Part shown: piece by piece, positions 1 to 56,205 of the stretch
Layout of the letters: each line of letters begins with the position of its first letter
Numbering within the stretch: position 1 is the stretch's first letter
NCBI GenBank assembly: GCA_026770705.1
Contig: JANJGN010000071.1
Location: forward strand, 372,001 to 436,000
From: Isurus oxyrinchus
Lineage: Eukaryota
DNA length: 64,000 nucleotides
Direction: 5' to 3'
The notes under the pieces: model-generated
The model's database searches: none
What the model was told of the DNA's origin: nothing
The model's input: only the letters and a program-made list of their open reading frames with translations
Program-made: the position numbers and the translations under genes

Positions 1-1010
1 CTCGAGCCTGTTACACAGGAACAGGAGGAGGCCCATTCAGCCCCCTCGAGCTTGTTACACAGGAACAGGAGGAGGCCTATTCATTCCCTCAAGCCTGTTA
101 CACAGGAACAGGAGGAGGACCATTCAGCCACTCAAGCCTGTTACATGAGGACAGGAGAAAGCCCATCAGCCTCTTGAGCCTATTATACAGGAACAGGAAC
201 AGGAAAAGGACATTCAGTCCCTCAACACCCTTCCACAGGAACAGGAGAGAGTCTCAGCTCCTCGAGCCTGTTACCCAGGAACAGGAAGAGGACATTCAGT
301 CTCTCAACCCACTTACACAGGAATAGGAAACCCATTCAGTCCCTCGTGCCTGTTACACAGGAAAAGGAGGAGGCCCATTCTGTTCCCTCGAGCCTGTTAC
401 ACAGGAACAGGAGGAGGCCCATTCTGTCCCCTTGAGCCTGTTACACAGGTACAGGAGACCCATTCAGCCTCCACAAGCTTGTTACACAGGAACATTAGGG
501 GCTCCATTTAGCCCCATCAAGCCTGTTACACAGGAACAGGAGGAGGCCCATTCAGCCACTCAAGCCTGTTAGATAGGAACAGGTGGAGGCCCATTCAGCC
601 CCATGATGCTGTTACACAGGAACAGGAGGAGGCCCATTCTGTCCCCTTGAACCTGTTACACAGGAACAGGAGGTGGCCCATTCAGACCATCTAACCTGTA
701 AGACAGGAAAACAAGGAGATCCATTCAGCCTCTTGAGCCTGTTACACAGGAACAGGAGGAGGCCTATTCGGACACTCGAGCCTGTTACACAAGGACAGGG
801 GGAGGGCATTCAGCACCTGGAGCCTGTTACACAGGAACAGGAGGAGGCACATTCAGCCCTGCCAAAGACTGTTACACAGGAACAGGGGGAGGCTTAATCA
901 GCCACACAATCATGTCACACTGGAACAGGAGGAGGCCCATTTAGACCCCTCGAGCCTGTTACACAGGAACAGGAGGAGGCCCATTCAAACCCTCGAGCTT
1001 GTTGCATATG
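1..1010. repeat. ~43-bp minisatellite (CTCGAGCCTGTTACACAGGAACAGGAGGAGGCCCATTCAGCCC)
   Basis: Many degenerate tandem copies; same family at 45.0-47.5 kb. Confidence 0.95.
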
Positions 1011-1164
1011 AACAGTCAATGGCCCTTCAACCACATTATTGGCACGCAAAGGGTTAACAGTTTTCTAACAGTGCGAGGCAAAGAGTTGCTTTCTCACTTG
1101 GTACCAAGCACTTCCACATTTTGACTCACAGTGACACATGCACCCTTTTTAATTAAACACAAAT

Positions 1165-1249
1165 AGGGAGCAGCACAGGAAGAGGTCATTCAGCCCAAGC
1201 AGAGCGTGTGGGCAGTTCCTCCCCAGGCGAGCAGTCGGACAGGTCCTGG
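1165..1249 (+). other. Gene A 85-nt upstream (putative first/5'UTR) exon
   Basis: Conserved block ending TCCTGG|GTAAGT about 450 nt upstream of the leader ATG in every gene copy. Confidence 0.6.
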
Positions 1250-1699
1250 GTAAGTAACGGAACGATTGGAATTCACTTCCACGACCAACACTGTCCTTTG
1301 TTGATGTTGTGACTTTATAAAGACAGATTCCAATGATTGATGCCTTTGAAAGATTTTTACTGATTATTGAATTCTGGGTGTGAGACTCAAGTCTGTTGTA
1401 CAGAACATCTTTCTAGCTCAAGGGATGAGGGAACTGCAGAGACATGAGCTTTGGGATGTCCTGAGATAGTGAAAGGTGCTATAGAAATGCAAATCAATCA
1501 TTGTTTGTCTTACTTAAAGACTTGTAACTCTCTGCAGAGCACCTATCATCCCACAGAGAATCAAATTAGTCTGTGAAGACATTGTCTAAAAGCAGTTCTG
1601 ATCTCTCGAGAGCTGTCGGACAAGAGGTGAGGTCTCATTAACTCCTTTCTCTTTCACAGCTTGAGAGTGAGAAGTGGATGGAATATCTGGGAGTGGACG

Positions 1700-1739
1700 A
1701 TGGTCAGGAAATCTTACTTCCTCCTGTCACTTCTCCAAG
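1700..1739 (+). pseudogene. Gene A signal peptide exon (MVRKSYFLLSLLQ)
   Basis: ATG, hydrophobic leader, phase-1 donor G|GTAAT; five paralogous copies. Confidence 0.85.
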
Positions 1740-2441
1740 GTAATATCATCATCAGCTCGGACAGATTTATGGTTAATATTCTTTGTAAAAGATCATTCTT
1801 ATCTCTTTATCTCTGTAACCTCCTGCAACTCACCCAAACAACTTCCCAGATCTCTGTGTTACTCCAATTCCGGCCTCTTGACCATCCCCCGATTCCCATC
1901 ACTCCAATACTGGCGGCCGGGCCTTCAGCTGCCTGGGGCCTGAGCTCTGGAATTCACTCCCTAAACCTCGGGATGGAGGAGCTCAGAGGGTTTCATTTTA
2001 CTGAGAATCACCACGACCACATCACAGCTGCAGTGAGAATAGACAGAGAGTCCAGCCCTCACACTTCCTGCACAGTTTCACCATAGCAACCACAATATGG
2101 AAATTTAAAAATACTGAAAGTTAAACTGAAGCTCAAACCAGTCAGTGTAGAGAGATGAGATGTTTACACAGTTTCCCTGTGTGTCTTGTAGACACTGTGT
2201 TGGGTGGAAGACTGGCTTCACTAAACAGGGTCCTGAGGACCATGAGCCAATGTAGAATGAACTTGTCCACTCCTGTGTCCAGGATTCTCTTCCCTCCGTT
2301 GTGAAACCTTGGGGAATTCCATGTGTGTCCTGTAGATGGTCCACACTGCAGCCACTGTGCCCCAGTGATGGAGAGGGTGGATATCGAGTCTAGTGGATCT
2401 ACAAACCTTCCAGAGTTAAATATTGACATTTCTCTCCATAT

Positions 2442-2816
2442 TTGGACTGTCACAAGATTGAAAAGGCGACACTTCACGAGAGGTGACAGCGCAGGATGGT
2501 TCGTGTGTACAGATTCCATGTCATTACAGTTACTTATCAAATTTCATAGGGAGATCACGTGTCGGAATCTGCTTGAAAGGAATAGATGGGAACCCACAGC
2601 CGAAATGGTCTATAGCCTTTCATTCCGAAGGTCACAGTCACAGGGATCAAAGATTCCACCATCGGACCCGGCTGTCTGGAGACCTGAAAGATGGCGACTG
2701 TTCCCTGATTATAAACAACATCAGACGGGAAGATGCAGGACCTTATTTTTTCAGAATAGAATTTGACAGCAGGAATAGATACAACTATTATCCTGTAACC
2801 CAGCTTCACGTTTCTG
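2442..2816 (+). pseudogene. Gene A Siglec V-set exon, inactivated
   Basis: Acceptor CCCAG mutated to CATAT; in-frame TGA at 2459-2461 replacing Trp; C-strand Trp replaced by Cys; otherwise collinear with other V exons. Confidence 0.9.
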
Positions 2817-3195
2817 GTAAGTGCTGTGTTATAATTACTCAACAATTCACATTCAACACTCAATGGGAGATAACACAAACTGTGACGTTTACATATTAAC
2901 ACAAAACGCAGCTTATTATAACTTGCTATCTGATTCTCAATAACCTGGTGATAGCTTCCAGTTCAGTCCTAAAGCAACCTCTAATACTCACTTTAATATC
3001 AATGATTAAATGTATTCACTGTGTCCATCAATGTTATCAGGTTATCCACTCCCATTAGTCTACCTAATGCTTTTTAAATGTCTAACAATTTGACAAAAGA
3101 AGGATGTGCATTCCTATAGCGTCTTCCCATTAAGTATAAATTGTGGTTCACTTTCTGTTGGTAATCCTGCGAACGGGCTTCTTGATTCCTGCCCT

Positions 3196-3348
3196 GACAT
3201 CTTAATGTCCAAATGAACAGAACAAGTTCCAACAATGAGCTGTGGTTGGTGATTCCTCCCATTACATATCGGGACACTGGAGACTATCAGTGTGTGGCAG
3301 AGAATGAACATGGAGCAGTGGAGGGGTTCATAACCATCACTGTGGAAC
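3196..3348 (+). pseudogene. 5'-truncated Ig exon remnant (gene A)
   Basis: 3' half of the 282-nt Ig exon (MNRTSSNNELWL...TVE|GTGAGT) without its normal acceptor. Confidence 0.85.
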
Positions 3349-5019
3349 GTGAGTGTACACAGACATCAACATCTCTCTCACATTCAAACATTGCACAAAC
3401 ACACACAAATATACAGAACTAAATAGACACATGCAGACACACATGTATGAGCAATTACAAAGACACACTCACGAACAAACACACTAGCACACACTCCCCT
3501 GTGGTTTACCTGAGTACTGCACTGGAGAGTTGGCCTGGATTCTGGGATTTGTGTTCCCAATCATGTTTATGGAAGAATATGGAAATTACAAAGTCTATTA
3601 CAGACACTCAGATGCATAGAGACACTCACAGATACTCTCTGCCTCTCCAACTCTCTCTCTCCCTTTAAGAAGCTTCCTGAAAGCTAACCCTTCGAACAAT
3701 CACCGGCCCCAACTCCTCCTTATCTGATTCTGTGTGATTTTGTTTGTGTATCTGAGAGTAAGAGAGAGGTGGAGAGGTTTAGTTAGAGAATTCCTGCTGG
3801 TGAAAATCTTACATCATTTACTCACCTTTCCAGTGCACATATTTCCCAGTATGTCCAATGCCCCTGTTTATAATGATGACTGCCTATGTAAACGTCACGC
3901 TGTAGTTACAGTCTCCCACCAGTGGTGGCATTGTAGCACTTAATCCTTGTGTTTCCCAGCTTTTCAAGCAACTCCACTTCCCAGTTTGCTACACAAGCTG
4001 TGAGTTCATCAGAATTAAATTATTTCTCAAATGATAGATTTGATAATTCATTTTATTGAAAACTTCCTCAGTGCCTCCCTGAAGGGTTTACACTCTCTGG
4101 GAAGCAGGAATAGGCTGGATGTTGGGGAGTTCATCTTTTCCCAGAGAGTAGGGATCCTTGAGAATGTGCTGTCAGTGGGTGTGGTAGTTCCTGTTTCTCT
4201 GTCGCCTTCAAGAGGGATCTGGAATGGTTACTGACTGGGGGAGAGATCATGGAAGCGGAGAATGATACAGCACAGGAGGAGGCCATTCAGCCCACTGTGC
4301 CTGTGCCAGGTCTTTCAATGTTCTATCCAATCAGATCCACTAACCACCACTCCACTTTACCCCATCTTCCTCCTTCAAGTGTTTATCCAATTTCCCTTTT
4401 GAAAGTTCCTATTGAATCTGCTTCCACTGCCCTTTCAGGCAGCACCTTCCAGATCACAACAACTCGCTCTGTCAAAACAAATTCTCCTCAACTCCCCCTC
4501 CGGTTTGTCAATCTGTGTCCCTCTGGTTACCGACCCTCCTGCCCCTTAAATACATCGATACTGTTCACCTCAACCACTCCCTGTGGGAGTGAGTTCCACA
4601 TTCTCCCCTCTCTCTGGGTAAAGATTGGAACTGTTTATTAAGCGGGGGGTGTAAGTCCGTGGGGGAGTCCATCTCGATTCTGCCCGATTCGCAAACGCGT
4701 CCGAGATGGATTTCCACCCTGCACTAAACGTTTCCAGAATTTTCTACAGCACAATCCTGTACACAGCGATGGAGAGAAACATTGGACAGGGAGTCCAACA
4801 GCACAATGATCCATTCTCACCAATGTTCCACGCTAAGGGGAAAGTTCCGATTGTCCACTCTTAGAGTGTTTACAATGAAAACATTCGTTCCACATTGAAT
4901 CCCAGTGGATGGGTCAATATTACAGCAAATGTTGCAGTGATATGAAGCTTGATTGTTCAGCCAGAGTGAGAGATTGAAAGCGGAGAGTCAGTGATGATTT
5001 CTTTCTGTGTGTTCTCTAG

Positions 5020-5159
5020 ACAGTGGAGGAGAGATTCTGCATGTGATCCTGATCCTGGGAATACGAGCTGTGATATTCCTTGTGGCTGTGGTTATCACTA
5101 TCACTGGAGTCTGTGTCTGGGAGAGACAAACAGTGAAAGGAAGTCGACAGACTGTTTGA
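5020..5159 (+). pseudogene. Gene A activating-type TM/short-tail exon (Arg in TM)
   Basis: CTCTAG acceptor; SGGEILHVILILGIRAVIFLVAVVITITGVCVWERQTVKGSRQTV*. Confidence 0.8.
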
Positions 5160-5269
5160 AGCTTTGTACAGCAACAATCTGGTCAGTCAGTGCGGACAAA
5201 TAACGTGTGATGTTGTGTTAAGTTGTAATGAAACTGGTCAGTGTCCTGGTTAGAATCACCTTCGTATCA

Positions 5270-5880
5270 GAGAGGCATTCCAGCACAGTAGGAGACCATT
5301 CAGCCCATTAAGTCTATGCTGTCTCTGTGTAGAGCAATCCACTCAGTCCCATTCCCCCGCTCTATCCCCGTATCCCTGCATGTTTATTTCCAAGTGTCCA
5401 ACCAATTTCTGTTTGAAATCGTTCATCGTCTCCACTTCCACCATCCTCGCAGGCAGCGAGTTCCTGCTCATTACCACTCGCTGTGTAAAAAAGTTCCTCC
5501 TCACATCCCCCCACTGCCCACAACCTTCAATCTGTGTCCCCCAGTCCTTGTCCCATCAGCTAATGGCAACAGCTTCTCTTTGTCTACCGTATCTAAACCC
5601 ATCATCATCTTGTACACCTCGATCAGATCCCCCCTCAATCTCCTTTGCTCCAAGGAGAACAACCCCAGCTTCTCCAACCCAACCTTGTCGCTAAAATCCC
5701 TCATCCCTGGACCCATTCTGCTCAATCTCCTCCCCACCCTCTCAAGGACCCTCACTTCCTTCCCAAAGTGAGGAGACCAGAACTGGACACAATACTCTAG
5801 CTGTGACCTAACCAGAGCTTTATAAATGTTCAGCATAACCTCCCTGTGTTTGTACTCAATCCCTCGATTTATGAAAAGCT
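5270..5880 (-). mobile_element. CR1 LINE 3' fragment
   Basis: ORF 5501-5926 with LEYCVQFWSP and LEQRRLRGDLIEVYK, typical of the CR1 ORF2 C-terminus. Confidence 0.9.
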
Positions 5881-6594
5881 TATTCTTTCCATCAGCACAA
5901 ACAGCAATTTCCAAGCGGACTCCCATCAGCAGACAGAGTGCAATGAAACATCGGCATGCCTGCTTCTTAATGTACGGAGAGAAACCTGGAACGAGAGATT
6001 CTCCTTCTTCTCCTCAGCAAGCTGAAACTTTTCCTTATACCTGGTGCTCCCCAGTCCTGCTGTGTGGACACATCATAACCACGGCATTGTCTGGCTGTGT
6101 GCAGCCAACATGGTCAAATAGGAATGAACAGAAATGTGACATTGCTAAACTCTGTTCTCTGATTGGAATGTGCTTTCTGAATGCTGCACCTTTTTCATGC
6201 TGCGATAGATTGTAAGAAGCATTTGGGTTATGAATAAAATTACATTGATTAACACAAGTGATTAAAATGTTCAGCCTTTTCTGTAGATACTTATGGATTA
6301 AAATTCTTATTTTGCTGCCAGATTCTTGGCTCAAAGACATTATTTCATGTTGTCACTTTTTCCAGTCAGATGAATTCCTGTGGCCATCTTTATAATGGAA
6401 ATTTTCAATGTAAACACGTCACATTGCAGCTGCACACTCCTGCCAGTGGTGGTGCCATTCCAAAACTGTCTTGCTGCACCAACACAGTGAGAATTATTCT
6501 CGACATGTACATGATGTTGTTGTTACACAGACATCAGGCGGAATCTTGGGCTGTGCCTAGAATGCACTTAGGACATTGCAGACCACGCACAGAA

Positions 6595-7030
6595 TTGACA
6601 GTGCAGCGTTTCCTCAATCCTGACCCTCGGTCAGTGCAGCGCTCCCTCATTACTGTCCCTCTGACAGTGCTGCACTACCTCATTATTGACCCTTTTCAAG
6701 TGCAGCACCCTGTCAGAACTGACCTTCTGACAGTGCAGCACACCCTCATGGCTGACAATCTGACAGTGCAGCACTCCCTCAGTACTCATCCACCCACAGT
6801 GCAGCACTCCCTCAGTACTGATCCTCTGACACTGTATCCCTCCCTCACTACTGACCTTCCGACAGTTCAGCACTCCCACGGTACACACCTTCTGACAGTG
6901 CAGCACTCCCTCAGTACAGACTCTCTGACAGTGCAGCACTCCCTCAGTACTCACCCTCCCACAGCGCAGCCCTCTCTCAGTACTCACCCTCCCACAGTGC
7001 AGCACTCCCTCAGTACTCACCCTCCCACGG
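6595..7030. repeat. 30-bp minisatellite (ACAGTGCAGCACTCCCTCAGTACTGACCCT-like)
   Basis: Tandem 30-mers (TVQHSLSTDP in translation). Confidence 0.9.
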
Positions 7031-7244
7031 TGCTGTTCGAGTTGATTCAATCAAGACTGGTGCCCAAAGAGGGAGGTTTCAATGCTAAATCATTGAATCG
7101 GTGAAAATTATTTTTAGGCTTACGGGAACAAGACTTAGTTCCTCAAATCCTTTCTTTTGCAATAACACACAGTACAAGAATTCTGTTTAAATAAATTCCA
7201 GTTAAACTTTGCCATGAAAGGATATCTTCTCACACTCGGCTCTA

Positions 7245-7620
7245 CCTCAGTACTAACCCTCCCACAGTCCGGCACCCCCTCAATACTGACCCTCTGACTG
7301 TGCGGAACTCACTCAATACAGACCCGCCGACAGTTCAGCACTCCCACATTACTGACCCTCTGACAGTGCAGCACTCCCTCAGTACTGAACCTCTGACCGT
7401 GCAGCACTCCCTCATTACTGACCCTCTGACAGTGCAGCACTCCCACATTACTGACCCTCTGACAGTGCAGCACGCCCTCACTACTGACCCTCTGACAGTG
7501 CAGCACTCTCCCATTACTGACCCTCTGATAGTGCAGCACTCCCACATTACTGACCCTCCCACAGTGCAGCACTCCCACAGTAGAGTCCCGCTGACAGTGC
7601 AGCACTCCCTCCGTAATGAT
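7245..7620. repeat. 30-bp minisatellite
   Basis: Same unit as 6595-7030. Confidence 0.9.
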
Positions 7621-13157: not shown

Positions 13158-13544
13158 TTGGACTGTCACAAGAGTGGAAAGGTGAAACTCCACGAGAGGT
13201 GACAGCGCAGGAAGGTTCGTGTGTACAGATTGCATGTAACTACAGTTATCCAGCACGTGTAGTAGGGAGAGCACGTGTCGGAATCTGGTACGTGAAATGG
13301 TACACATGGAATACATGGAATACAAGGTCTAGAGGGACCATAGCTTTTCACTCCAAGGATCACAATCGCGAGTTAGCACGGTTCCACCATCGGACACGGC
13401 TGTCTGGAGAACTGAAAGATGGCGACTGTTCCCTGATTATAAACAACATCAGACGGGAAGATGCAGGATATTATTATTTCAGAATAGAATTTGACAGCAG
13501 AAATACATACAGCTACTATCCTGCAACCCAGCTTCATGTTTCTG
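13158..13544 (+). CDS. Gene B Siglec V-set exon 1 (divergent C-C' loop)
   Basis: CCCCAG acceptor, G|GTAAGT donor, 387 nt open frame, EGSCVQIAC / GDCSLII / YYFRIE. Confidence 0.9.
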
Positions 13545-41640: not shown

Positions 41641-41826
41641 ATGTGAATCCTCCTTATAGAAACCTGCATGTACATGGATATTATCAATAAATATTACATA
41701 GATAAATGTTATTTGTATAGACCTTTCATGCATAGACAATATCACTTCACAAGTTCAGAATTACTACATGTACATAGGGAACCATTCTCAAACTGTACCG
41801 GAGTCATTCATTGGCTGATTTTACAG

Positions 41827-41923
41827 GGCGAGATTCCAATGAATGGAAAGCAGGATTGCTTGGAGCTGGAATCTGTTTGAGTGTTGGACTGAGTGGATTC
41901 TTCATCTTCAAGTGTGTGAGAAA
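41827..41923 (+). CDS. Gene D transmembrane exon
   Basis: RDSNEWKAGLLGAGICLSVGLSGFFIFKCVRK|GTAAGT; 97-nt paralogue of 20528-20624. Confidence 0.85.
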
Positions 41924-42631
41924 GTAAGTGCGAAGGTTTAATTGGTTGTCTTTGAACATGTTTTCTTCAACCTTCTCTCCTTTTCGAAAGAACTTGCGTT
42001 TCTATAGCAACTTTCACAACCCAAAACCCTTCACAGCCCCTGAAGAGCTTTGATGTTCACTCACTGTTTACCATCTCATCCAACACTCACTGTTTCACAA
42101 CTCAGTCCTGTAACTGGCAGTGTTGACCTGGACCATAAAATACATTGTGACTTCCTGATGATGCGAAATGTGCTATATAAATGAAAACCTTTCTTTTGTT
42201 AGTGAATGCAATCTCTTTCCATTTTCCCTGTCGCATTCACTCTCTCTCTTATCTCCACTAATGCACGCCTTCTCATTCTCTCTCTCATTCACTCTCTCTC
42301 CAATCTCCACTAATGCTCTCCTTCTCATTCTCTCTCTCTCGTCCTCTTACACGTTGTTCAGTCTCTCACATTTTTAAGGAGCGCTGAGCAACATCTGCTC
42401 CTTCAGAAGATCCACCTCAACACCTGGAATGAGCAGTGAAATGAAACTTGCTCAACGACTGCTCAGCTTTACACAGGAATCACGTCACAGAGTCAGGACA
42501 CAAAGGGTTAACGGTTTGCTTACAACACAACACTAAGACCCTACGTTTCAATGAAAGGGTTTTCACAATTGTTCCCCAATTCATGATTTGACTCACAGAG
42601 ACACATCAACCCTTTCTCATTAAATACACAG

Positions 42632-47780: not shown

Positions 47781-48230
47781 GTAAGTAACGGAACGATTGG
47801 AATTCACTTCCACCACCAACACCGTCCTTTGTTGATGTTGTGACTTTATAAAGACAGATTCCAATGATTGATGCCTTTGAAAGATTTCTACTGATTATTG
47901 AGATCTGGGTGTGAGGCTCAAGTCTGTTGTACAGAACATCTTTCTAGCTCAAGGGATGAGGGAAGAGCAGGGACATGAGCTTTGGGACATCCTGAGGTGG
48001 TGAAAGGTGCTATGGAAATGCAAGTCCTTCAATGTTTTTCTTTCTTAAAGCCTTGTAACTCTCTGCAGAGCACCTATCATCCCACAGAGAATCAAATTAG
48101 TCTGTGAAGACATTGTGTAAAAGCAGTTCTGATCTCTCGAGAGCTGTCGGACAAGAGGTGAGGTCTCATTAACTCCTGTCTCTTTCACAGCTTGAGAGTG
48201 AGAAGTGGATGGAATATCTGGGAGTGGACG

Positions 48231-48270
48231 ATGGTCGGGAAATCTTACTTTCTCTTGTCACTTCTCCAAG
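48231..48270 (+). CDS. Gene E signal peptide exon (MVGKSYFLLSLLQ)
   Basis: ACGATGG Kozak context, phase-1 donor. Confidence 0.88.
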
Positions 48271-48973
48271 GTAATATCATCATCAGCTCGGATAGATTTA
48301 TGTTTAACAATCTTTGTAAAAGATCATTCATATCTCTTTATCTCTGTAACCTCCTGCAACTCACCCAAACAACTTCCCAGATCTCTGTGTTACACCAATT
48401 CCGGCCTCTTGACCATCCCCCGATACCCATCACTCCAATACTGGCGGCCGGGCCTTCAGCTGCCTGGGGCCTGAGCTCTGGAATTCACTCCCTAAACCTC
48501 GGGGATGGAGGAGATCAGAGGGTTTCATTTTACTGAGAATCACCACGACCACATCACAGCTGCAGTCAGAATAGACAGAGAGTCCAGCCCTCACACTTCC
48601 TGCACAGTTTCACCATAGCAACCACAATATGGAAATTTAAAAATACTGAAAGTTAAACTGAAGCTCAAACCAGTCAGTGTAGAGAGATGAGATGTTTACA
48701 CAGTTTCCCTGTGTGTCTTGTAGACACTGTGTTGGGTGGAAGACTGGCTTCACTAAACAGGGTCCTGAGGACCATGAGCCAATGTAGAATGAACTTGTCC
48801 ACTCCTATGTCCAGGATTCTCTTCCCTCCATTGTGAAACCTTGGGGAATTCCTTGTGTGTCCTGTAGATGGTCCACACTGCAGCCACTGTGCCCCAGTGA
48901 TGGAGGGGGTGGATATCGAGTCTAGTGGATCTACAAACTATCCAGAGTTAAATATTGATATTTCTCTCCCCAG

Positions 48974-49342
48974 TTGGACTGTCACAAGAGTGGAAAGGTG
49001 ACACTCCACGAGAGGTTGCAGCACAGGAAGGCTCGTGTGTACAGATTCCATGTCATTACAGTTATCCATCGTGTCTGGAAAACCAACCGCGAGGTGGAGT
49101 CTGGTTTAATAATGAGAAACAGATTCCCTGGGCTCCCATTGCCTTTCACTCCAAGGATCACAGTCACGAGTTACCACGGTTCCACCATCGGACCCGGCTG
49201 TCTGGAGACCTGAAAGATGGCGACTGTTCCCTGATTATAAACAACATCAGACGGGAAGATGCAGGACCTTATTTTTTCAGAATAGAATTTGACAATGGTC
49301 CGAGCCATAACTATTACCCTGTAACCCAGCTTCTCGTTTCTG
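48974..49342 (+). CDS. Gene E Siglec V-set exon
   Basis: 369 nt, intact, essential Arg present. Confidence 0.92.
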
Positions 49343-50201
49343 GTAAGTGCTGTGTTATAATTACTCAACAATTCACATTCAACACTCAATGGGAAATAAC
49401 ACAAACTGTGATGTTTACATATTAACACAAAACACAGCTTATTATAACACACTGTCTGATTCTCAATAACCTGGTAATGGCTTCCAGTTCAGTCCTAAAG
49501 CAACCTCTAATACTCAGTTTAATATCAATGATGAAAAGCATTAACTGTATTATCAGGTTATCCACTCCCATCAATCTCTCCTGTCCTGTTTAAAAGTCTG
49601 ACTTATCGATCAAAGAAAGATGTGCATTTCTGCAGCGCAATTTACCACCTCAGGAGGATCCAAATCCCTTCACAGCCATTGAAATTATTCCTGAATTGTA
49701 GTCACAGATGTAAAACACAGCAGGCAGTTTGTGCACAGCAAGATCCAACAAACCACAAGGTGCTAAATCACCTAGATCACTGAGGAAATGAAAAGCCAGT
49801 GAACAGAAACCTCTGGTCTGATGAAGAGTCATACGGACTCGAAACTTTAACCCTGGCTTCCTCTCCACTGATACTGTCAGACCTGCTGAGTCTTTCCAGC
49901 AATTTTTGTTTTTGTTTCAGATTTCCAGCATCCGCAGTATTCTGCTTTTAACTCCAATCTCTGGTCTGAGCCTCTTCTCTCATCCAGTGTTCTCAATTTA
50001 CATGTCTCGGAGTGAACGTGTATTAAGCTGAGAGACAGAAACACCAAAGTCTCAAAGCAGGAAATTCTCTCCTGATCATTGTAACCTCTCAGATCTGATA
50101 TCATCCTTGTAAAAGTGCTTTCTCTTGTGGGACTGTGATTTCTATTTGAACTGATGCTTCACGTTATATTTCTCTAAAAGGATCCATTTTCTGTCTGTTA
50201 G

Positions 50202-50498
50202 ATTTCACAGATAAACCCACGATTTTCCCTGCTGAAATTATTGCAGGAAAGCCTGTGGATGTAAGCTGCACCTTCAACACAATGTGCAATGGAACAGCAG
50301 CACCTGTCTTAACCTGGGACACTCCCACTGACGTACCTGGATCAGTCTCAAACACTGTAACTCAGCATGGTGTCACTCTGACCTATACTTCTGTTCTGAC
50401 CCTGACCCCATCACTCAAACACCACGGACACACTCTCAGCTGCAGAGTGAGATATCCATCTGTTTCATCGGAGCGGACCCTCGTACTAACTGTGCAAG
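50202..50498 (+). CDS. Gene E C2-set exon
   Basis: 297 nt intact, G|GTTAGT donor. Confidence 0.9.
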
Positions 50499-50821
50499 GT
50501 TAGTATGGACACCCTTCATTCTACATCAGCACTCCCTCAGCGCTGACCCTCTGACAGTGCAGCTCATTCTCAGTATCCACATTCTCAGACCTCTCAAAGT
50601 GCTTCACAGTCGATAGAAGTTAATTGATCTTTATTTGATTATTGCTGAATGAAGAGACAAGCTGTCTAAAGTTTACATCTCGCACACACCATTCTCCATG
50701 GCAACACCTCCACCTATCAGAGACCACTTGCCAACCAATCAGCACTCTCCTCCCATTAAGTATAAATTGTTGTTCACTTTCTGTTGGTAATCCTGCGAAC
50801 GTGCTTCTTGATTCCTGCCCT

Positions 50822-50974
50822 GACATCTTAATGTCCAAATGAATAGAACAAGTTCCAACAATGAGCTGTGGTTGGTGATTCCTCACGTTACATCCAGGGA
50901 CACTGGAGACTATCAGTGTGTGGCAGAAAATGAACATGGAGCAGTGGAGGGGTTCATAACCGTCACTGTGGAAC
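50822..50974 (+). pseudogene. 5'-truncated Ig exon remnant (gene E intron)
   Basis: Same breakpoint as 3196-3348. Confidence 0.8.
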
Positions 50975-52646
50975 GTGAGTGTACACAGACTTCAACATCT
51001 GTCTCAGATTCAAACATTACACAAACACCCTCAAATATACAGAACTAAATAGACACGTGCAGACACACATGTATGAGCAATTACAAAGACACACTCACGA
51101 ACAAACACACTAGCACACACTCCCCTGTGGTTTACCTGAGTACTGCACTGGAGAGTTGGCCAGGATTCTGGGATTTGTGTTCCCATTCATATTTATGGAA
51201 GAATATGGAAATTGCAAAGTCTATTACAGACACTCAGATGCATAGAGGCACTCACAGATACTCTCTGCCTCTCCAACTCTCTCTCTCCCTTTAAGAAGCT
51301 TCCTGAAAGCTAACCCTTCGAACAATCACCGGTCCCAACTCCTCCTTATCTGATTCTGTGTGATTTTGTTTGTGTATCTGAGAGTAAGAGAGAGGTGGAG
51401 AGGTTTAGTTAGAGAATTCCTGCTGGTGAAAAGCTTACATCATTTACTCACCTTTCCAGTGCACATATTTCCCAGTATGTCCAATGCCCCTGTTTATAAT
51501 GATGACTGCCTATGTAAACGTCATGCTGTAGTTACATTCTCCCACCAGTGGTGGCATTGTAGCACTTAATCCTTGTGTTTCCCAGCTTTTCAAGCAACTC
51601 CACTTCCCAGTTTGCTACACAAGCTGTGAGTTCATCAGAATTAAATTATTTCTCAAATGATAGATTTGATAATTCATTTTATTGAAAACTTCCTCAGTGC
51701 CTCCTTGAAGGGTTCACACTCTCTGGGAAGCAGGAATAGGCTGGATGTTGGGGAGGTCATCTTTTCCCAGAGAGTAGGGATCCTTGAGAATGTGCTGTCA
51801 GTGGGTGTGGTAGTTCCTGTTTCTCTGTCGCCTTCAAGAGGGATCTGGAGTGGTTACTGACTGGGGGAGAGATCATGGAAGCGGAGAATGATACAGCACA
51901 GGAGGAGGCCATTCAGCCCATTGTGCCTGTGCCAGGTCTTTCAATGTTCTATCCAATCAGATCCACTAACCACCACTCCACTTTGCCACCATCATCCTCC
52001 TTCAAGTGTTTATCCAATTTCCCTTTTGAAAGTTCCTATTGAATCTGCTTCCAGCGCCCTTTCAGGCAGCACCTTCCAGATCACAACAACTCGCTCTGTC
52101 AAAACAAATTCTCCTCATCTCCCCCTCCAGTTGGTCAATTTGTGTCCCTCTGGTTACCGACCCTCCTGCCCCTTAAATACATCGATACTGTTCACTTGAA
52201 CCACTCCCTGTGGGAGCGAGTTCCACATTCTCCCCTCTCTCTGGGTAAAGATTGGAACTGTTTATTAAGCGGGTGGTGTAAGTCCGTGGGGGAGTCCATC
52301 TCGATCCTGCCCGATTCGCACACACGTCCGAGATGGATTTCCACCCTGCACTAAACGTTTCCAGAATTTTCTACAGCACAATCCTGTACACAGCGATGGA
52401 GAGAAACATTGGACAGGGAGTCCAACAGCACAATGATCCATTCTCACCAATGTTCCACTCTAAGGGGAAAGTTCCGATTGTCCACTCTTAGAGTGTTTCC
52501 AATGAAAACATTCATTCCACATTGAATCCCAGTGGATGGGTCAATATTCCAGCAAATGTTGCAGTGATATGAAGCTTGATTGTTCAGCCAGAGTGAGAGA
52601 TTGAAAGCGGAGAGTCAGTGATGATTTCTTTCTGTGTGTTCTCTAG

Positions 52647-52786
52647 ACAGTGGAGGAGAGATTCTGCACGTGATCCTGATCCTGGGAATACGAGCTGTGA
52701 TATTCCTTGTGGCTGTGGTTATCACTATCGCTGGAGTCTGTGTCTGGGAGAGACAAACAGTGAAAGGAAGTCGACAGACTGTTTGA
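52647..52786 (+). CDS. Gene E activating-type TM and short tail exon (Arg in TM)
   Basis: SGGEILHVILILGIRAVIFLVAVVITIAGVCVWERQTVKGSRQTV*; phase 1, joins C2 in frame. Confidence 0.85.
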
Positions 52787-52894
52787 AGCTTTGTACAGCA
52801 ACAATCTGGTCAGTCAGTGCGGACAAATAACGTGTGATGTTGGGTTAAGTGTAATGAAACTGGTCAGTGTCCTGGTTAGAATCACCTTCGTATC

Positions 52895-53510
52895 AGAGAG
52901 GCATTCCAGCACAGTGGGAGCCCATTCAGCCCATTGAGTCCATGCTGTCTCTCTGTAGAGCAATCCAGTCAGTCCCATTCCCCTGCTCTATCCCCGTATC
53001 CCTGTGAGTTTATTTCCCCTCAAGTGTCCATCCAATTTCCTTTTGAAATCGTTCATCGTCTCCACATCCACCATCCTCGTAGGCAGCGAGTTCCAGCTCA
53101 TTACCACTCGCTGTGTAAAAAAGTTCCTCCTCACATCAACCCCTGTCCAAATCCTTCAATCTGTGTCCCCCAGTCCTTGTACCATCAGCTAATGGCAACA
53201 GCTTCTCTTTGTCTACCTGATCTAAACCCATCATCATCTTGTACACCTCGATCAGATCCCCCCTCAATCTCCTTTGCTCCAAGGAGAACAACCCCAGCTT
53301 CTCCAACCCAACCTTGTAGCTAAAATCCCTCATCCCTGGACCCATTCTGCTCAATCTCCTCCCCACCCTCTCAAGGACCCTCACTTCCTTCCCAAAGTGA
53401 GGAGACCAGAACTGGACACAATACTCTAGTTGTGACCTAACCAGAGCTTTATAAATGTTCAGCATAACCTCCCTGTGTTTGTACTCAATTCCTCGATTTA
53501 TGAAAAGCTT
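52895..53510 (-). mobile_element. CR1 LINE 3' fragment (duplicate of 5270-5880)
   Basis: ORF 53136-53555. Confidence 0.9.
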
Positions 53511-54219
53511 ATTCTTTCCATCAGCACAAACAGCAATTTCCAAGCGGACTCCCATCAGCAGACAGAGTGCAATGAAACATCGGCATGCCTGCTTCTTAAT
53601 GTACGGAGAGAAACCTGCAACGAGAGATTCTCCTTCTTCTCCTCAGCAAGCTGAAACTTTTCCTTATACCTGGTGCTCCCCAGTCCTGCTGTGTGGACAC
53701 ATCATAACCACGGCATTGTCTGGCTGTGTGCAGCCAACATGGTCGAATAGAAATGAACAGAAATGTGACGTTGCTAAACTCTGTTCTCTGATTGGAATGT
53801 GCTTTCTGAATGCTGCACCTTTTTCATGCTGCGATAGATTGTAAGAAGCATTTGGGTTATGAATAAAATTACATTGATTAACACAAGTGATTAAAATGCT
53901 CAGGCTGTTCTGTAGATATTTATAGATTAAAATACTTATTTTGCTGCCAAATTCTTGCCTCAAAGAAAAGCTTCTTGTTGTCACATTTTCTCTATTATAT
54001 AAATTCCTGTGCCCATCCTTATAATAGAAATTTCCAATGTAAACATGTCACATTGTAGTTTCACACTCCTGCCAGTAGTGGTGCCATTCCAAAGCTGTCC
54101 TGCTGCACAGACACAGTGAGAAATATTCTCGATGTGTACATGATGTTGTTGTTACACAGACATCAGGCGGAACCTTGGGCAGTGCCTAGAATGCACTTAG
54201 GACAGTGCAGACCATGCTC

Positions 54220-56205
54220 AGAACTGACAGTGCAGCGTTTCCTCAGTGCTGACCCTCCGTCAGTGCAGCGCTCCCTCATTACTGTCTCTCTGACAGTGCT
54301 GCACTACCTCATTATTGACCCTTTTCAAGTGCTTCACCCCGTCAGCATTGACCTTCTGACCGTGCAGGATTCCCTCATGGCTGACACTCTGACAGTGCAA
54401 CACTCCCTGAATACTGACCCTCTGATACTGTACCCCTCCATCACTAATGACTTTCCAACAGTTCAGCACTCCCTCGGTACAGACCCTCTGACAGGGCAGC
54501 ATTCCCTCAGTATTCAAACTCCCACTATGCAGCTGTCCCTCAGTATTCTCACCCCCACAGTGCAGCACTCCCTCAGTACTCTCCCTCCCACAGTGCAGTA
54601 CTCCCTCAGTACTCACCCTCCCACAGTGCAGCACTCCCTCAGTACTCACCCTCCCACAGTGCAGCACTCCCTCAGTACTCACCCTCCCACAGTGCAGTAC
54701 TCCCTCAGTACTCACCCTCCCACAGTGCAGCACTCCCTCAGTTCTCTCACTCCCACAGTGCAGCACTCCCTCAGTTCTCTCACTCCCACAGTGCAGCACT
54801 CCCTCAGTACTCACCCTCCCACAGTGCAGCACACCCTCAGTACTCACCCACCCACAGTGCAGCACTCCCTCAGTACTCACCCACCCACAGTGCAGCACTC
54901 CCTCAGTACTCACCCTCCCACAGTGCAGCACTCCCTCAGTTCTCTCACTCCCACAGTGCAGCACTCCCTCAGTTCTCTCACTCCCACAGTGCAGTACTCC
55001 CTCAGTACTCACCCTCCCACAGTGCAGCACTCCCTCAGTACTCACCCTCCCACAGTGCAGCACTCCCTCAGTACTCACCCTCCCACAGTGCAGCACTCCC
55101 TCAGTACTCACCCTCCCACAGTGCAGCACTCCCTCAGTACTCACCCTCCCACAGTGCAGAACTCCATCAGTACTCACCCTCCCACAGTGCAGCACTCCCT
55201 CAGTACTCATCCTCCCAAAGTGCAGCACTCCCTCAGTACTCACCCTCCCACAGTGCAGCACTCCCTCAGTACTCACCCTCCCACAGTGCAGCACACCCTC
55301 AGTACTCACCCTCCCCCAGTGCAGCACTCCCTCAGTACTCACCCTCCCACAGTGCAGTACTCCCTCAGTACTCACCCTCCCACAGTGCAGCACACCCTCA
55401 GTACTCACCCTCCCACAGTGCTGTGTGAGTTGTTTCAATCAAGACTGGTGCACAAAGAGGGAGGTTTCATTGCTAAATCATTGAACTCGGTGAAAATTAT
55501 TTTTAGGCTTACGGGAACAAGAATTAGTTCGTCATATCCTTTCTTTAGCAATAACACACAGTACTAGAATCTCTGTTTAAATAAATTCCAGTTAAACTTT
55601 GCCATGAAAGGATATCTTCTCACACTCCGCTCTACCTCAGTACTAACCCTCCCACAGTCCGGCACCCCCTCAATACTGACCCTCCAACTGTGCGGAACTC
55701 ACTCAGTGCAGACCCGCCGACAGTGCAGCACTCCCTCATTACTGACCCTCCGACATTGCAGCATTCCTTCACTACTGGCCCTCTGACAGTGCAGCACTCC
55801 CACATTACTGACCCTCTGATAGTGCAGCAGACCCTCAGTACTGACCCCACTAACAGTGCAGCACTCGCTCAGTACTGACCCTCCCACAGTGCAGCACTCT
55901 CTCAGTACTACACTCCTGACAGTGAAGCACTCCCTTATTAATGACCCTCTTCCAGTGCAGAACTCCCACATTACTGACACTCTGACAGTGCAGCACTCCC
56001 ACATTACTGTCCCTCTGACAGTGCAGCACTCCCTCAGTACTGACCCTCCGACATTGCAGCAATCCTTCACTACTGGCCCTCTGACAGTGCAGCAATCCCA
56101 CATTACTGACCTTCTGATAGTGCAGCACTCACTCAGTACTGACCCTCACACAGTGCAGCACTCCCTCAGTACTATACCCCTGACAGTGCAGCACTCCTTC
56201 AGTAA
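54220..56205. repeat. 30-bp minisatellite arrays (expanded)
   Basis: CACAGTGCAGCACTCCCTCAGTACTCACCCTCC-type units; much longer than the paralogous 6.6-7.6 kb arrays. Confidence 0.95.

What the first reader, a model, noticed from the sequence alone, without database searches (positions are those of the whole stretch)
48231..52786. Intact two-Ig activating Siglec-like gene with a transmembrane arginine
Leader (40) + V (369) + C2 (297) + TM exon (140) = 846 nt, a clean 281-aa frame. The TM reads ILILGIRAVIFLVAVVITIAGVCVW with Arg near its outer end, followed by a 12-residue tail without tyrosine. Established: such basic TM residues recruit ITAM adaptors (FcR-gamma for LILRA/GPVI-type Arg, DAP12 for Siglec-14/15/16). 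The ORF track reads this exon in the wrong frame.
Basis: partly seen in the sequence, partly recalled or inferred. Interest (0 to 1): 0.8.

Follow-up and report, generated by a model that had tools for sequence, protein, structure and literature searches.

The report
Shark activating-type Siglec-like receptor gene
This is a real, open and spliced shark gene for a small sialic-acid-lectin-type immune receptor with an arginine in its membrane anchor and almost no tail. That is the usual build of an 'activating' partner to the long-tailed inhibitory receptor genes beside it, and the same build already sits unremarked in automatic annotation of other sharks.

Summary
Four exons (48231-48270, 48974-49342, 50202-50498, 52647-52786) have canonical GT..AG borders and phase-1 introns. 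They sum to 846 nt, which is 281 codons plus a stop.

- **Domains:** the V exon is a Siglec V-set domain with the sialic-acid arginine kept. The second exon is a Siglec-type C2 domain.
- **Last exon:** it encodes a transmembrane (TM) helix with one Arg and a 12-residue tail without tyrosine.
- **RNA:** contigs of four RNA-like runs from four studies join 49342|50202 and 50498|52647. One run also joins 48270|48974. They are about 98% like the window and carry paralogue letters in the C2 exon, so this exact copy is not proven to be expressed.
- **Public models:** six gene models from great white shark and two catsharks have the same V-C2-TM(Arg) build, and both arginines are invariant.
- **Neighbours:** these carry uncharged TM exons, and gene C also a long TEYAQI tail. 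A roughly 440-bp tract over the V exon is about 98% identical to one of them, inside flanks that differ by 18-31%. This resembles the conversion seen between SIGLEC5 and SIGLEC14.
- **Twin copy:** the copy at 1700-5159 is dead.

Adaptor coupling is inferred, not shown. The scan noted this exon type at least six times elsewhere in this genome. Verdict: a new member of a known kind.

The parts
48231..48270 (+). Exon 1: start codon and signal-peptide leader (MVGKSYFLLSLLQ plus the first base of the next codon)
   Evidence: Sequence and translation. The leader is 11-12/13 identical to the leaders of seven of the eight public shark Siglec-like models first compared; P0006 lacks it. The joint 48270|48974 is seen in one contig of run X5.
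48974..49342 (+). Exon 2: Siglec V-set domain. The sialic-acid arginine is codon AGA 49279-49281 (residue 116). The cysteines follow the Siglec pattern C-x4-C ... C.
   Evidence: PDB matches: Siglec-5 9e-15, Siglec-8, Siglec-7, MAG and CD33. Pfam V-set 7e-11 and Ig_CD22 5e-9. The joint 49342|50202 is seen in all four runs.
48982..49420 (+). Conversion-like tract shared with the V exon of the ITIM-type neighbour C (16841-17279)
   Evidence: E and C differ at 9/439 positions inside the tract, against 23/74 and 67/376 in the flanks. Inside, E=C≠F at 13 sites and E=F≠C at 1 site; outside, the flanks show about 100 against 2.
50202..50498 (+). Exon 3: C2-set Ig domain with three cysteines, like Siglec domain 2
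   Evidence: Pfam C2-set_2 1e-8. PDB domain 2 of CD33, Siglec-10, MAG and Siglec-5. It is 97.3-97.6% identical to the C2 exons of neighbours C, D and F.
50824..50974 (+). Dead remnant: the C-terminal half of a third Ig (I-set) exon with its donor GTGAGT kept. It is skipped in the mRNA.
   Evidence: Pfam I-set 1.7e-7, matching profile positions 49-90 of 90 only. It is 95-97% identical to the 3' halves of the repeated Ig exons of D and F. A TGA lies at 50821-50823. No upstream AG gives an open, frame-keeping exon that covers the remnant. RNA contigs join 50498 directly to 52647.
52647..52786 (+). Exon 4: stalk SGGE, a TM helix with Arg251 (CGA 52691-52693), the 12-residue tail ERQTVKGSRQTV, and the stop at 52784-52786
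   Evidence: Translation. The joint 50498|52647 (GT..AG) is seen in X1, X5, X6 and X7. Identity is 41-43/45 to three great white shark models and 31/38-38/45 to three catshark models, with the Arg invariant. Neither Pfam nor PDB gives a match.
1700..5159 (+). Twin copy A of the same gene type, a pseudogene. The leader is at 1700-1739. The V exon at 2442-2816 has lost its acceptor (AT at 2440-2441) and has TGG changed to TGA at 2459-2461. The C2 exon is deleted. The Ig remnant is at 3198-3348 and an intact TM(Arg) exon at 5020-5159.
   Evidence: Self-BLAST: 47500-49628 matches 969-3112, and 50748-54662 matches 3122-7033, so the equivalent of 49629-50747 is missing. Sequence. The TM exon differs at 2 of 140 bases.
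16833..23358 (+). Inhibitory-type partner (gene C). The V exon is at 16833-17201, the C2 exon at 17926-18222, an uncharged TM exon near 20504-20640 (GLFTAGIMLSVFLAGIFIFICVRK), and a cytoplasmic exon at 23113-23358 with LLYANP and TEYAQI.
   Evidence: ORF and hydropathy scans and exon BLAST. The same TM and tail type with LLYANI/TEYAQI occurs in many public shark models.

Best explanation
The region 48231-52786 is an intact gene for a 281-residue type I membrane protein. It has a signal peptide, a Siglec V-set domain that keeps the sialic-acid-binding arginine (Arg116), one C2-set domain, a short stalk, a transmembrane helix with a single buried arginine (Arg251), and a 12-residue tail without any tyrosine motif.

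It is the activating-type member of a tandem Siglec-like cluster. The other members carry uncharged TM exons, several extra Ig domains (D, F), and, in gene C, a long ITIM/ITSM-type tail.

Proposed origin: a multi-Ig ancestor lost half of its third Ig exon, whose remnant lies at 50824-50974. It now splices the C2 exon to a separate Arg-TM cassette exon. Its ligand-binding V exon has been homogenised with that of an inhibitory neighbour by a conversion-like event.

Proposed working: the ectodomain binds the same sialylated ligands as the inhibitory paralogues. Arg251 pairs in the membrane with the aspartate of a dimeric ITAM adaptor (a DAP12-like or FcR-gamma/zeta-like chain). Ligand binding then triggers Syk-type activation instead of phosphatase recruitment.

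Shown: the exons, frames, splice junctions in RNA, domain homology, conservation of both arginines, the cluster context and the mosaic V exon.

Inferred: sialic-acid binding, adaptor pairing, the sign of signalling, and expression of this exact copy.
For: - Exons and frames.
- Siglec homology with the essential Arg and the cysteine pattern aligned.
- Spliced contigs with GT..AG joints at 49342|50202 and 50498|52647 in four runs from four studies, and 48270|48974 in one. Depth is high on exons and near zero on unique intron sequence.
- Six public models in three species of two shark orders share V-C2-TM(Arg). The TM and tail are 82-96% identical to this exon, and both arginines are invariant. 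This matches or exceeds V-domain conservation with the catsharks (66-83%).
- Neighbours C and D have uncharged TM exons that are unrelated to this one at the DNA level. C also has a TEYAQI tail exon.
- Mosaic V exon.
- Established knowledge: basic TM residues pair with Asp of DAP12 or FcR-gamma (PMC8102735). Siglec-14 shares its first two domains with Siglec-5 through gene conversion and uses DAP12 (PMC4042635). Siglec-14, -15 and -16 lack an ITIM and use DAP10/DAP12 (PMC7226832).
Against: - No adaptor was tested, and no adaptor gene is in the window.
- A 2014 survey found no FcR-gamma in cartilaginous fish (PMC4016189). An unchecked note of this scan says otherwise.
- All contigs over the C2 exon carry G at 50253 and T at 50406. 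These are the letters of paralogues C and F, not of this copy. The TM-exon contigs differ from the window at about 3 of 150 bases. The RNA may therefore come from sister copies or alleles.
- This copy has private replacements: Ala15, His70 and Leu120 of the V exon peptide, and Pro17, Met27 (which destroys an NTT sequon) and Thr68 of the C2 exon peptide.
- Its twin copy A is dead.
- Within the window, the TM exon is not significantly better conserved than its flanks between A and E (2/140 against 3.7%, P=0.11).
Confidence: 0.68

Rival explanations
1. The gene type is real and expressed, but this particular copy is a young, silent or decaying duplicate. The RNA seen would then come from sister copies elsewhere in the genome.
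For: C2-exon contigs in all four runs carry the paralogue letters at 50253 and 50406, and none carries this copy's letters. The copy has six private amino-acid replacements, including loss of one N-glycosylation sequon. The twin copy A, only about 3.7% diverged, is already dead. Unchecked scan notes list several more copies of this exon in the genome, one of them dead.
Against: All four exons are open and all six splice sites are canonical. The start context is good. In this window, only this copy has both a C2 exon and an Arg-TM exon, and the C2|TM joint is seen in four runs. Logan contigs drop rare variants, and the runs may come from other individuals or a sister species, so absence of the private letters proves little.
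Confidence: 0.22
2. It is a membrane protein with a short tail that does not signal through an ITAM adaptor. It could be a decoy or competitor that soaks up ligands of the inhibitory paralogues. Alternatively, the Arg could serve ER retention, assembly with another partner, or shedding.
For: No adaptor is shown. The tail ERQ.VKGSRQTV is itself nearly invariant between lamnid and catshark models (11/12 identical), which hints at a role of its own. Batoid relatives have short-tailed forms with uncharged TM helices (P0064, P0074, P0080, P0089), so short tails exist in this family without a buried charge.
Against: A single buried Arg kept invariant in all seven copies seen (this exon, copy A and six public models; three named species plus this genome) is costly unless it is paired in the membrane. 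In every well-studied Ig-superfamily case of this build, the partner is a DAP12-, DAP10-, FcR-gamma- or zeta-family chain (PMC8102735, PMC7226832).
Confidence: 0.1

Closest known systems
Human Siglec-14, the activating partner of Siglec-5
   Same: It is an activating-type Siglec with a TM arginine and a short tail. It lies next to an inhibitory Siglec gene. The exons for the first two Ig domains are kept nearly identical to that neighbour by gene conversion (PMC4042635). NCBI's pipeline names two catshark models with this V-C2 core 'Siglec-14' (P0003, which carries the Arg cassette, and P0004, which does not).
   Different: It is not an orthologue. I did not type the subfamily, and teleost genomes are reported to lack CD33-related Siglecs (PMC7226832). 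It has two Ig domains rather than three. The TM exon has no detectable similarity outside sharks. The adaptor is unknown.
Siglec-15, the activating Siglec conserved from fish to mammals
   Same: It has two Ig domains (V plus C2), a basic TM residue, a short tail, and DAP12/DAP10 coupling (PMC7226832).
   Different: Siglec-15 uses a lysine. Its V domain is a much weaker match (E 7e-8, against 9e-15 for Siglec-5). Siglec-15 is a single conserved gene, not a member of a fast-evolving tandem cluster.
Automatic gene models in sharks: P0006, P0009 and P0010 (Carcharodon carcharias), P0003 and P0008 (Scyliorhinus canicula), P0050 (S. torazame)
   Same: They share the V-C2-TM(Arg)-short tail build. 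Identity to P0006 is 92% in the V exon, 95% in the C2 exon and 91% in the TM exon. The TM exon is 96% identical to P0009 and P0010.
   Different: No model is identical to this copy, and no 281-aa product of this locus turned up in the protein collection. The models have generic names (CD33-like, Siglec-12/13/14). I found no paper that discusses them.
Macaque activating KIR and KIR2DL4-type receptors
   Same: An activating receptor was made by recombining an inhibitory-type ectodomain with a foreign TM and tail segment that carries an arginine (PMC8102735).
   Different: The Ig family is different. In those receptors the Arg sits at TM position 4 and pairs with FcR-gamma. Here it sits at about position 7-11.

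Membership tests
Siglec family (I-type lectins) | An N-terminal V-set Ig domain with the conserved F-strand arginine that binds the sialic-acid carboxylate | tested here: met
   YFFRIE aligns with YFFRVE of Siglec-5 in the phmmer alignment. The Arg is invariant in five aligned public relatives and nearly invariant in 122.
Siglec family (I-type lectins) | The unusual cysteine pattern: C-x4-C in strand B plus a Cys in strand E of domain 1, and three Cys in domain 2 (intra-sheet and inter-domain disulfides) | tested here: met
   The V exon has SCVQIPC...GDCSL, aligned to the Siglec-5 cysteines. The C2 exon has SCTFNTMC...LSC. There is one extra Cys (PSCLEN) in the V domain.
Siglec family (I-type lectins) | Actual binding of sialylated glycans | not testable with these tools
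   This needs a glycan array or cell binding with an ectodomain-Fc fusion, with and without sialidase and with an Arg116 mutant.
Adaptor-coupled (activating) Siglecs: Siglec-14, -15, -16 and -H type | One basic residue inside the TM helix | tested here: met
   Arg251 (CGA 52691-52693) is the only charged residue in the 26-29-residue hydrophobic run. It is invariant in six public models.
Adaptor-coupled (activating) Siglecs: Siglec-14, -15, -16 and -H type | A short cytoplasmic tail without ITIM or ITSM | tested here: met
   The tail is ERQTVKGSRQTV, 12 residues with no Tyr.
Adaptor-coupled (activating) Siglecs: Siglec-14, -15, -16 and -H type | Physical and functional association with DAP12, DAP10 or FcR-gamma through the basic residue | not testable with these tools
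   No adaptor gene lies in the window. The only lead is an unchecked scan note of an FcR-gamma gene elsewhere in this genome.
Adaptor-coupled (activating) Siglecs: Siglec-14, -15, -16 and -H type | Orthology to a named mammalian activating Siglec | tested here: not met
   The TM exon has no match in Pfam or PDB. The Siglec-15 V domain is a far weaker match than CD33-related Siglecs or MAG. The cassette was seen only in shark models. It works like these receptors but is not a member by descent.
Paired activating/inhibitory receptors | Closely linked genes with near-identical ligand-binding domains | tested here: met
   All lie in the same 64-kb window. The V domain is 117/122 identical to neighbour C, and the C2 domain is 93/98 identical to C and 94/98 to F. 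A conversion-like tract covers the V exon.
Paired activating/inhibitory receptors | Opposite signalling modules | tested here: inconclusive
   The modules differ as expected: an Arg-TM with a short tail, against an uncharged TM with a tail containing TEYAQI. Neither signal was measured. In this window the proximal motif reads LLYANP, which is not a canonical ITIM.
Paired activating/inhibitory receptors | Co-expression on the same cells | not tested
   The runs are coded and kept as contigs, so neither tissue nor cell type can be read from them.

The most novel reading that the evidence does not exclude
Elasmobranch Siglec-like clusters evolved true paired receptors independently of mammals. 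An inhibitory multi-Ig gene captured a separate Arg-TM cassette exon. The ligand-binding exon is kept matched to its inhibitory neighbour by gene conversion. This would make it the oldest known activating/inhibitory Siglec pair, shared at least by lamniform and carcharhiniform sharks. It would be a natural test of the 'counter-decoy against sialic-acid-mimicking pathogens' idea outside mammals.
Probability: 0.5. Interest if true: 0.55.

Novelty: new member of a known kind. Interest (0 to 1): 0.38.

Why it matters
Reviews of fish Siglecs list only Siglec-1, CD22, MAG and Siglec-15, and state that fish lack CD33-related Siglecs (PMC7226832). Paired Siglecs are discussed only for primates (PMC4042635, PMC5701461). 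A shark cluster that combines ITIM-type and Arg-TM-type genes with a shared, conversion-homogenised binding domain would change that picture. It would show that the paired-receptor solution arose, or arose again, at the base of jawed vertebrates. It also offers a compact two-domain receptor for asking which ITAM adaptor cartilaginous fish use.

There is a practical point too. Several public models stop right after the C2 exon (P0012, P0016, P0017). The short Arg-TM exon is therefore probably often missed by annotation pipelines.

Tried and rejected
1. **Selection on the TM exon inside the window.** Copy A and copy E differ at 2 of 140 bases, against 3.7% in the flanks. P=0.11, which is not significant. 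The argument for constraint rests on the cross-species models instead.
2. **Inclusion of the Ig remnant 50824-50974 as a third domain.** This is rejected. A stop lies at 50821-50823. No frame-keeping open exon starts from any upstream AG. The RNA joins 50498 directly to 52647.
3. **The multi-Ig gene D using this TM exon as its own 3' end.** This is rejected. D has its own uncharged TM exon at 41802-41939, 78% identical to that of gene C.
4. **Descent of the Arg-TM exon from the inhibitory TM exon.** No DNA similarity was found at word size 7, and the peptides do not resemble each other.
5. **TM exon against PDB and Pfam.** There was no match.
6. **Word search with the TM region of P0006.** It returned only three great white shark models. 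The catshark cassettes were found through whole-protein searches.
7. **The look-up of encoding contigs for P0006 and P0008.** I could therefore not compare exon structures or compute dN/dS on orthologous DNA.
8. **The large all-against-all HMMER search.** I did not use it. The word search and family scans settled the family, and a 45-residue hydrophobic query would not reach beyond close relatives.
9. **Literature searches for shark Siglecs or shark DAP12/FcR-gamma.** No paper on this gene type was found.
10. **Joined protein.** I made no joined (spliced) sequence and searched with none. All searches were exon by exon or used public full-length models.
Full report
**What is there**

| Exon | Coordinates | Length | Borders |
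|---|---|---|---|
| Leader | 48231-48270 | 40 nt | donor GTAATA |
| V | 48974-49342 | 369 nt | acceptor CCCCAG, donor GTAAGT |
| C2 | 50202-50498 | 297 nt | acceptor TGTTAG, donor GTTAGT |
| TM and tail | 52647-52786 | 140 nt | acceptor TCTCTAG, TGA at 52784-52786 |

- All introns are phase 1. The junction codons are G|TT, G|AT and G|AC.
- Each exon translates without a stop in its frame: 13+1+122+1+98+1+45 = 281 residues.
- The frame was checked by arithmetic and exon by exon. Full-length comparisons used public proteins returned by the tools.

**What the domains are**

- The V exon is a Siglec V-set domain. Its best solved relatives are Siglec-5 (9e-15), Siglec-8, Siglec-7, MAG, CD33, Siglec-10 and sialoadhesin. 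Siglec-15 (7e-8) and CD22 (5e-5) are much weaker.
- In the alignment to Siglec-5, three features line up: the C-x4-C motif, the strand-E cysteine, and the sialic-acid arginine (YFFRIE against YFFRVE).
- Pfam gives V-set and Ig_CD22 for this exon, and C2-set_2 for the next. The C2 exon matches domain 2 of CD33, Siglec-10, MAG and Siglec-5.
- The last exon has no Pfam or PDB match. It reads SGGEILHVILILGIRAVIFLVAVVITIAGVCVWERQTVKGSRQTV. Arg251 is its only charged residue within the hydrophobic run. The tail has 12 residues and no tyrosine.

**Is the junction used?**

- I laid Logan contigs of four runs on 48100-53000. The runs come from four studies and two coded organisms, and their kind was only guessed as RNA.
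- All four runs have contigs that skip exactly 49343-50201 and 50499-52646, with GT..AG ends. One run skips 48271-48973.
- In X5 and X6 the bridging records are continuous across the C2|TM joint. Record 22 of X6 has 56 letters of C2 followed by 164 letters of the last exon and 3' UTR.
- Depth is high on exons and close to zero on unique intron sequence. The contigs therefore behave as cDNA.
- There are two cautions. Every contig over the C2 exon carries G at 50253 and T at 50406, which are the letters of paralogues C and F. The TM-exon contigs differ from the window at about 3 of 150 bases. The RNA may therefore come from an allele, another individual or species, or a sister copy. Contigs cannot tell which.

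**Context: a tandem Siglec-like cluster**

Six-frame, hydropathy and self-BLAST scans show six gene units on the + strand.

| Unit | Main features |
|---|---|
| A | leader 1700, V 2442, TM 5020 |
| B/C | leader 8428, V exons at 13158 and 16833, C2 17926, uncharged TM exon near 20504-20640, cytoplasmic exon 23113-23358 (LLYANP and TEYAQI), duplicated at 25877 |
| D | leader 32321, V 35792, C2 37017, four more Ig exons, own uncharged TM exon 41802-41939 |
| E | the finding |
| F | leader 17017+40000 = 57017, V 57918, C2 59145, five or more Ig exons running off the window |

- Only A and E carry the Arg-TM exon.
- The remnant 50824-50974, between E's C2 and TM exons, is the C-terminal half of the repeated Ig exon of D and F (95-97% identical). 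Its donor is kept, but it is preceded by a stop and has no usable in-frame acceptor.
- E therefore descends from a multi-Ig gene that lost this exon and now ends in a different TM exon.

**The twin is dead**

- Copy A is E's recent duplicate. The flanks are 96.3% identical.
- Its V-exon acceptor reads AT, and codon 2459-2461 is TGA where E has TGG. About 1.1 kb including the C2 exon is missing.
- Its TM exon is still open, with one replacement. However, 2 mismatches in 140 bases is not significantly fewer than in the flanks (P=0.11).

**Conservation elsewhere**

- Word searches returned automatic NCBI models with the same V-C2-TM(Arg) build. These are P0006, P0009 and P0010 of Carcharodon carcharias, P0003 and P0008 of Scyliorhinus canicula, and P0050 of S. 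torazame.
- E's TM exon is 41-43/45 identical to the great white models. It is 38/45 identical to P0050, including 11 of 12 tail residues.
- By comparison, E's V domain is 66-83% identical to the catshark models that cover it.
- The TM Arg and the V-set Arg are invariant.
- Among 122 elasmobranch Siglec-like models, only these six carry the cassette. Most full-length ones have uncharged TM helices and LLYANI/TEYAQI-type tails.
- Several models end right after the C2 exon, so the cassette is probably under-annotated. No batoid model had it.
- From general knowledge, lamniform and carcharhiniform sharks separated well over 100 million years ago. Retention of the buried Arg over that span is the best computational argument that it matters.

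**Paired-receptor signature**

- E and F share a whole-segment duplication from leader to C2. Their introns are 1-3% diverged.
- Within 48982-49420, which covers the V exon and the first 78 nt of the next intron, E groups with C instead. E=C≠F at 13 sites, against E=F≠C at 1 site.
- In the flanks the count is about 100 to 2 the other way.
- E-C divergence is 9/439 inside the tract, against 23/74 and 67/376 outside.
- Because intron sequence is homogenised as well, this is conversion-like and not only purifying selection. The direction is unknown.
- The result is an activating-type gene whose V domain is 117/122 identical to that of an ITIM-type neighbour. The same pattern is described for SIGLEC5/14 and SIGLEC11/16 (PMC4042635, PMC5701461).

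**Mechanism and its limits**

- The build has one buried basic residue and a short inert tail. In known cases this is the build of receptors that dock onto the TM aspartate of DAP12, DAP10, FcR-gamma or zeta (PMC8102735, PMC7226832).
- The KIR rule of thumb places Lys at TM position 9 with DAP12, and Arg at position 4 with FcR-gamma (PMC8102735). Here the Arg is at position 7-11, depending on where the helix is taken to start. That is closer to the DAP12 geometry, but it is not decisive.
- A 2014 survey found no FcR-gamma in cartilaginous fish (PMC4016189). An unchecked follow-up note of this scan reports an FcR-gamma gene in this genome, 99% identical to a great white shark protein. I could not test either claim. 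The adaptor is therefore open.

**Novelty**

- The gene type already exists as unremarked automatic models under borrowed names (CD33-like, Siglec-12/13/14).
- This scan has flagged the same exon type at least six times on other DNA of this genome.
- I found no paper on it in the library. Fish Siglec reviews say fish lack CD33-related Siglecs (PMC7226832).
- This locus is an intact new member. What it adds is the local picture: a dead twin, an Ig-exon remnant that records the origin of the gene, and a conversion tract shared with an inhibitory neighbour.

**Tools**

- The large HMMER search was not used.

Noticed in passing
window 1700-5159: The twin of the finding (copy A) is a pseudogene. 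The V-exon acceptor AG is changed to AT at 2440-2441. TGG is changed to TGA at 2459-2461. About 1.1 kb holding the C2 exon is deleted. The Arg-TM exon at 5020-5159 is still open (ITIAG to ITITG).
   Followed up: yes
window 49000-49200 vs 2470-2680: Between the recent duplicates A and E, the introns are 95-100% identical. The first half of the V exon, around the C-C' loop, drops to 65-73% identity. So the ligand-contact part has been replaced or diversified in one of the two copies.
   Followed up: partly
window 20504-20640 and 41802-41939: These are the uncharged TM exons of the inhibitory-type genes C and D, 78% identical to each other. They show no detectable similarity to the Arg-TM exon.
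   Followed up: partly
window 23113-23358 and 25877-26117: The cytoplasmic exon with LLYANP and TEYAQI is present twice, at 94.6% identity. In this window the proximal motif has Pro at Y+3, which is not a canonical ITIM. Many public relatives read LLYANI instead.
   Followed up: no
window 49072-49074 (V exon peptide Cys33, PSCLEN): There is a fourth, presumably unpaired, cysteine in the V domain. It is shared by E, C and the great white shark models, but not by F (PAHLEN) or D (PSHLEK).
   Followed up: no
window 50282-50284: This copy reads NTM where paralogues C and F, and four of the five aligned public models, read NTT. One N-glycosylation sequon of the C2 domain is therefore lost (P0006 also has NTM).
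   Followed up: no
window 54224-56204, 6596-7615, 22716-22970: There are long arrays of a roughly 33-bp tandem repeat that give long meaningless ORFs in several frames. They lie just downstream of both Arg-TM genes, and in reverse orientation near gene C's tail.
   Followed up: no
window 53139-53642 (- strand) and 5504-6013 (- strand): A fragment like the C-terminal part of a LINE reverse transcriptase lies 0.35 kb downstream of the stop codon in both A and E. The first canonical AATAAA after the stop is only at 53862. RNA contigs cover at least 52790-52983.
   Followed up: no
window 52789: Contigs of the three organism-B runs have an extra T after 52789, in the 3' UTR three bases past the stop. 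The organism-A run does not.
   Followed up: no
public models P0064, P0074, P0080, P0083, P0089 (sawfish and skates): Batoid Siglec-like models have short tails of 6-10 residues but no charge inside the TM helix. The skate models (P0074, P0080, P0083, P0089) have a Lys at the outer TM border; the sawfish model P0064 does not. This is a different kind of short-tailed receptor from the shark Arg cassette.
   Followed up: no
public models P0012, P0016, P0017 (Cetorhinus, Carcharodon, Mustelus): These models stop at or just after the end of the C2 exon (…LTVQ). This suggests that annotation pipelines often miss the short Arg-TM exon.
   Followed up: no
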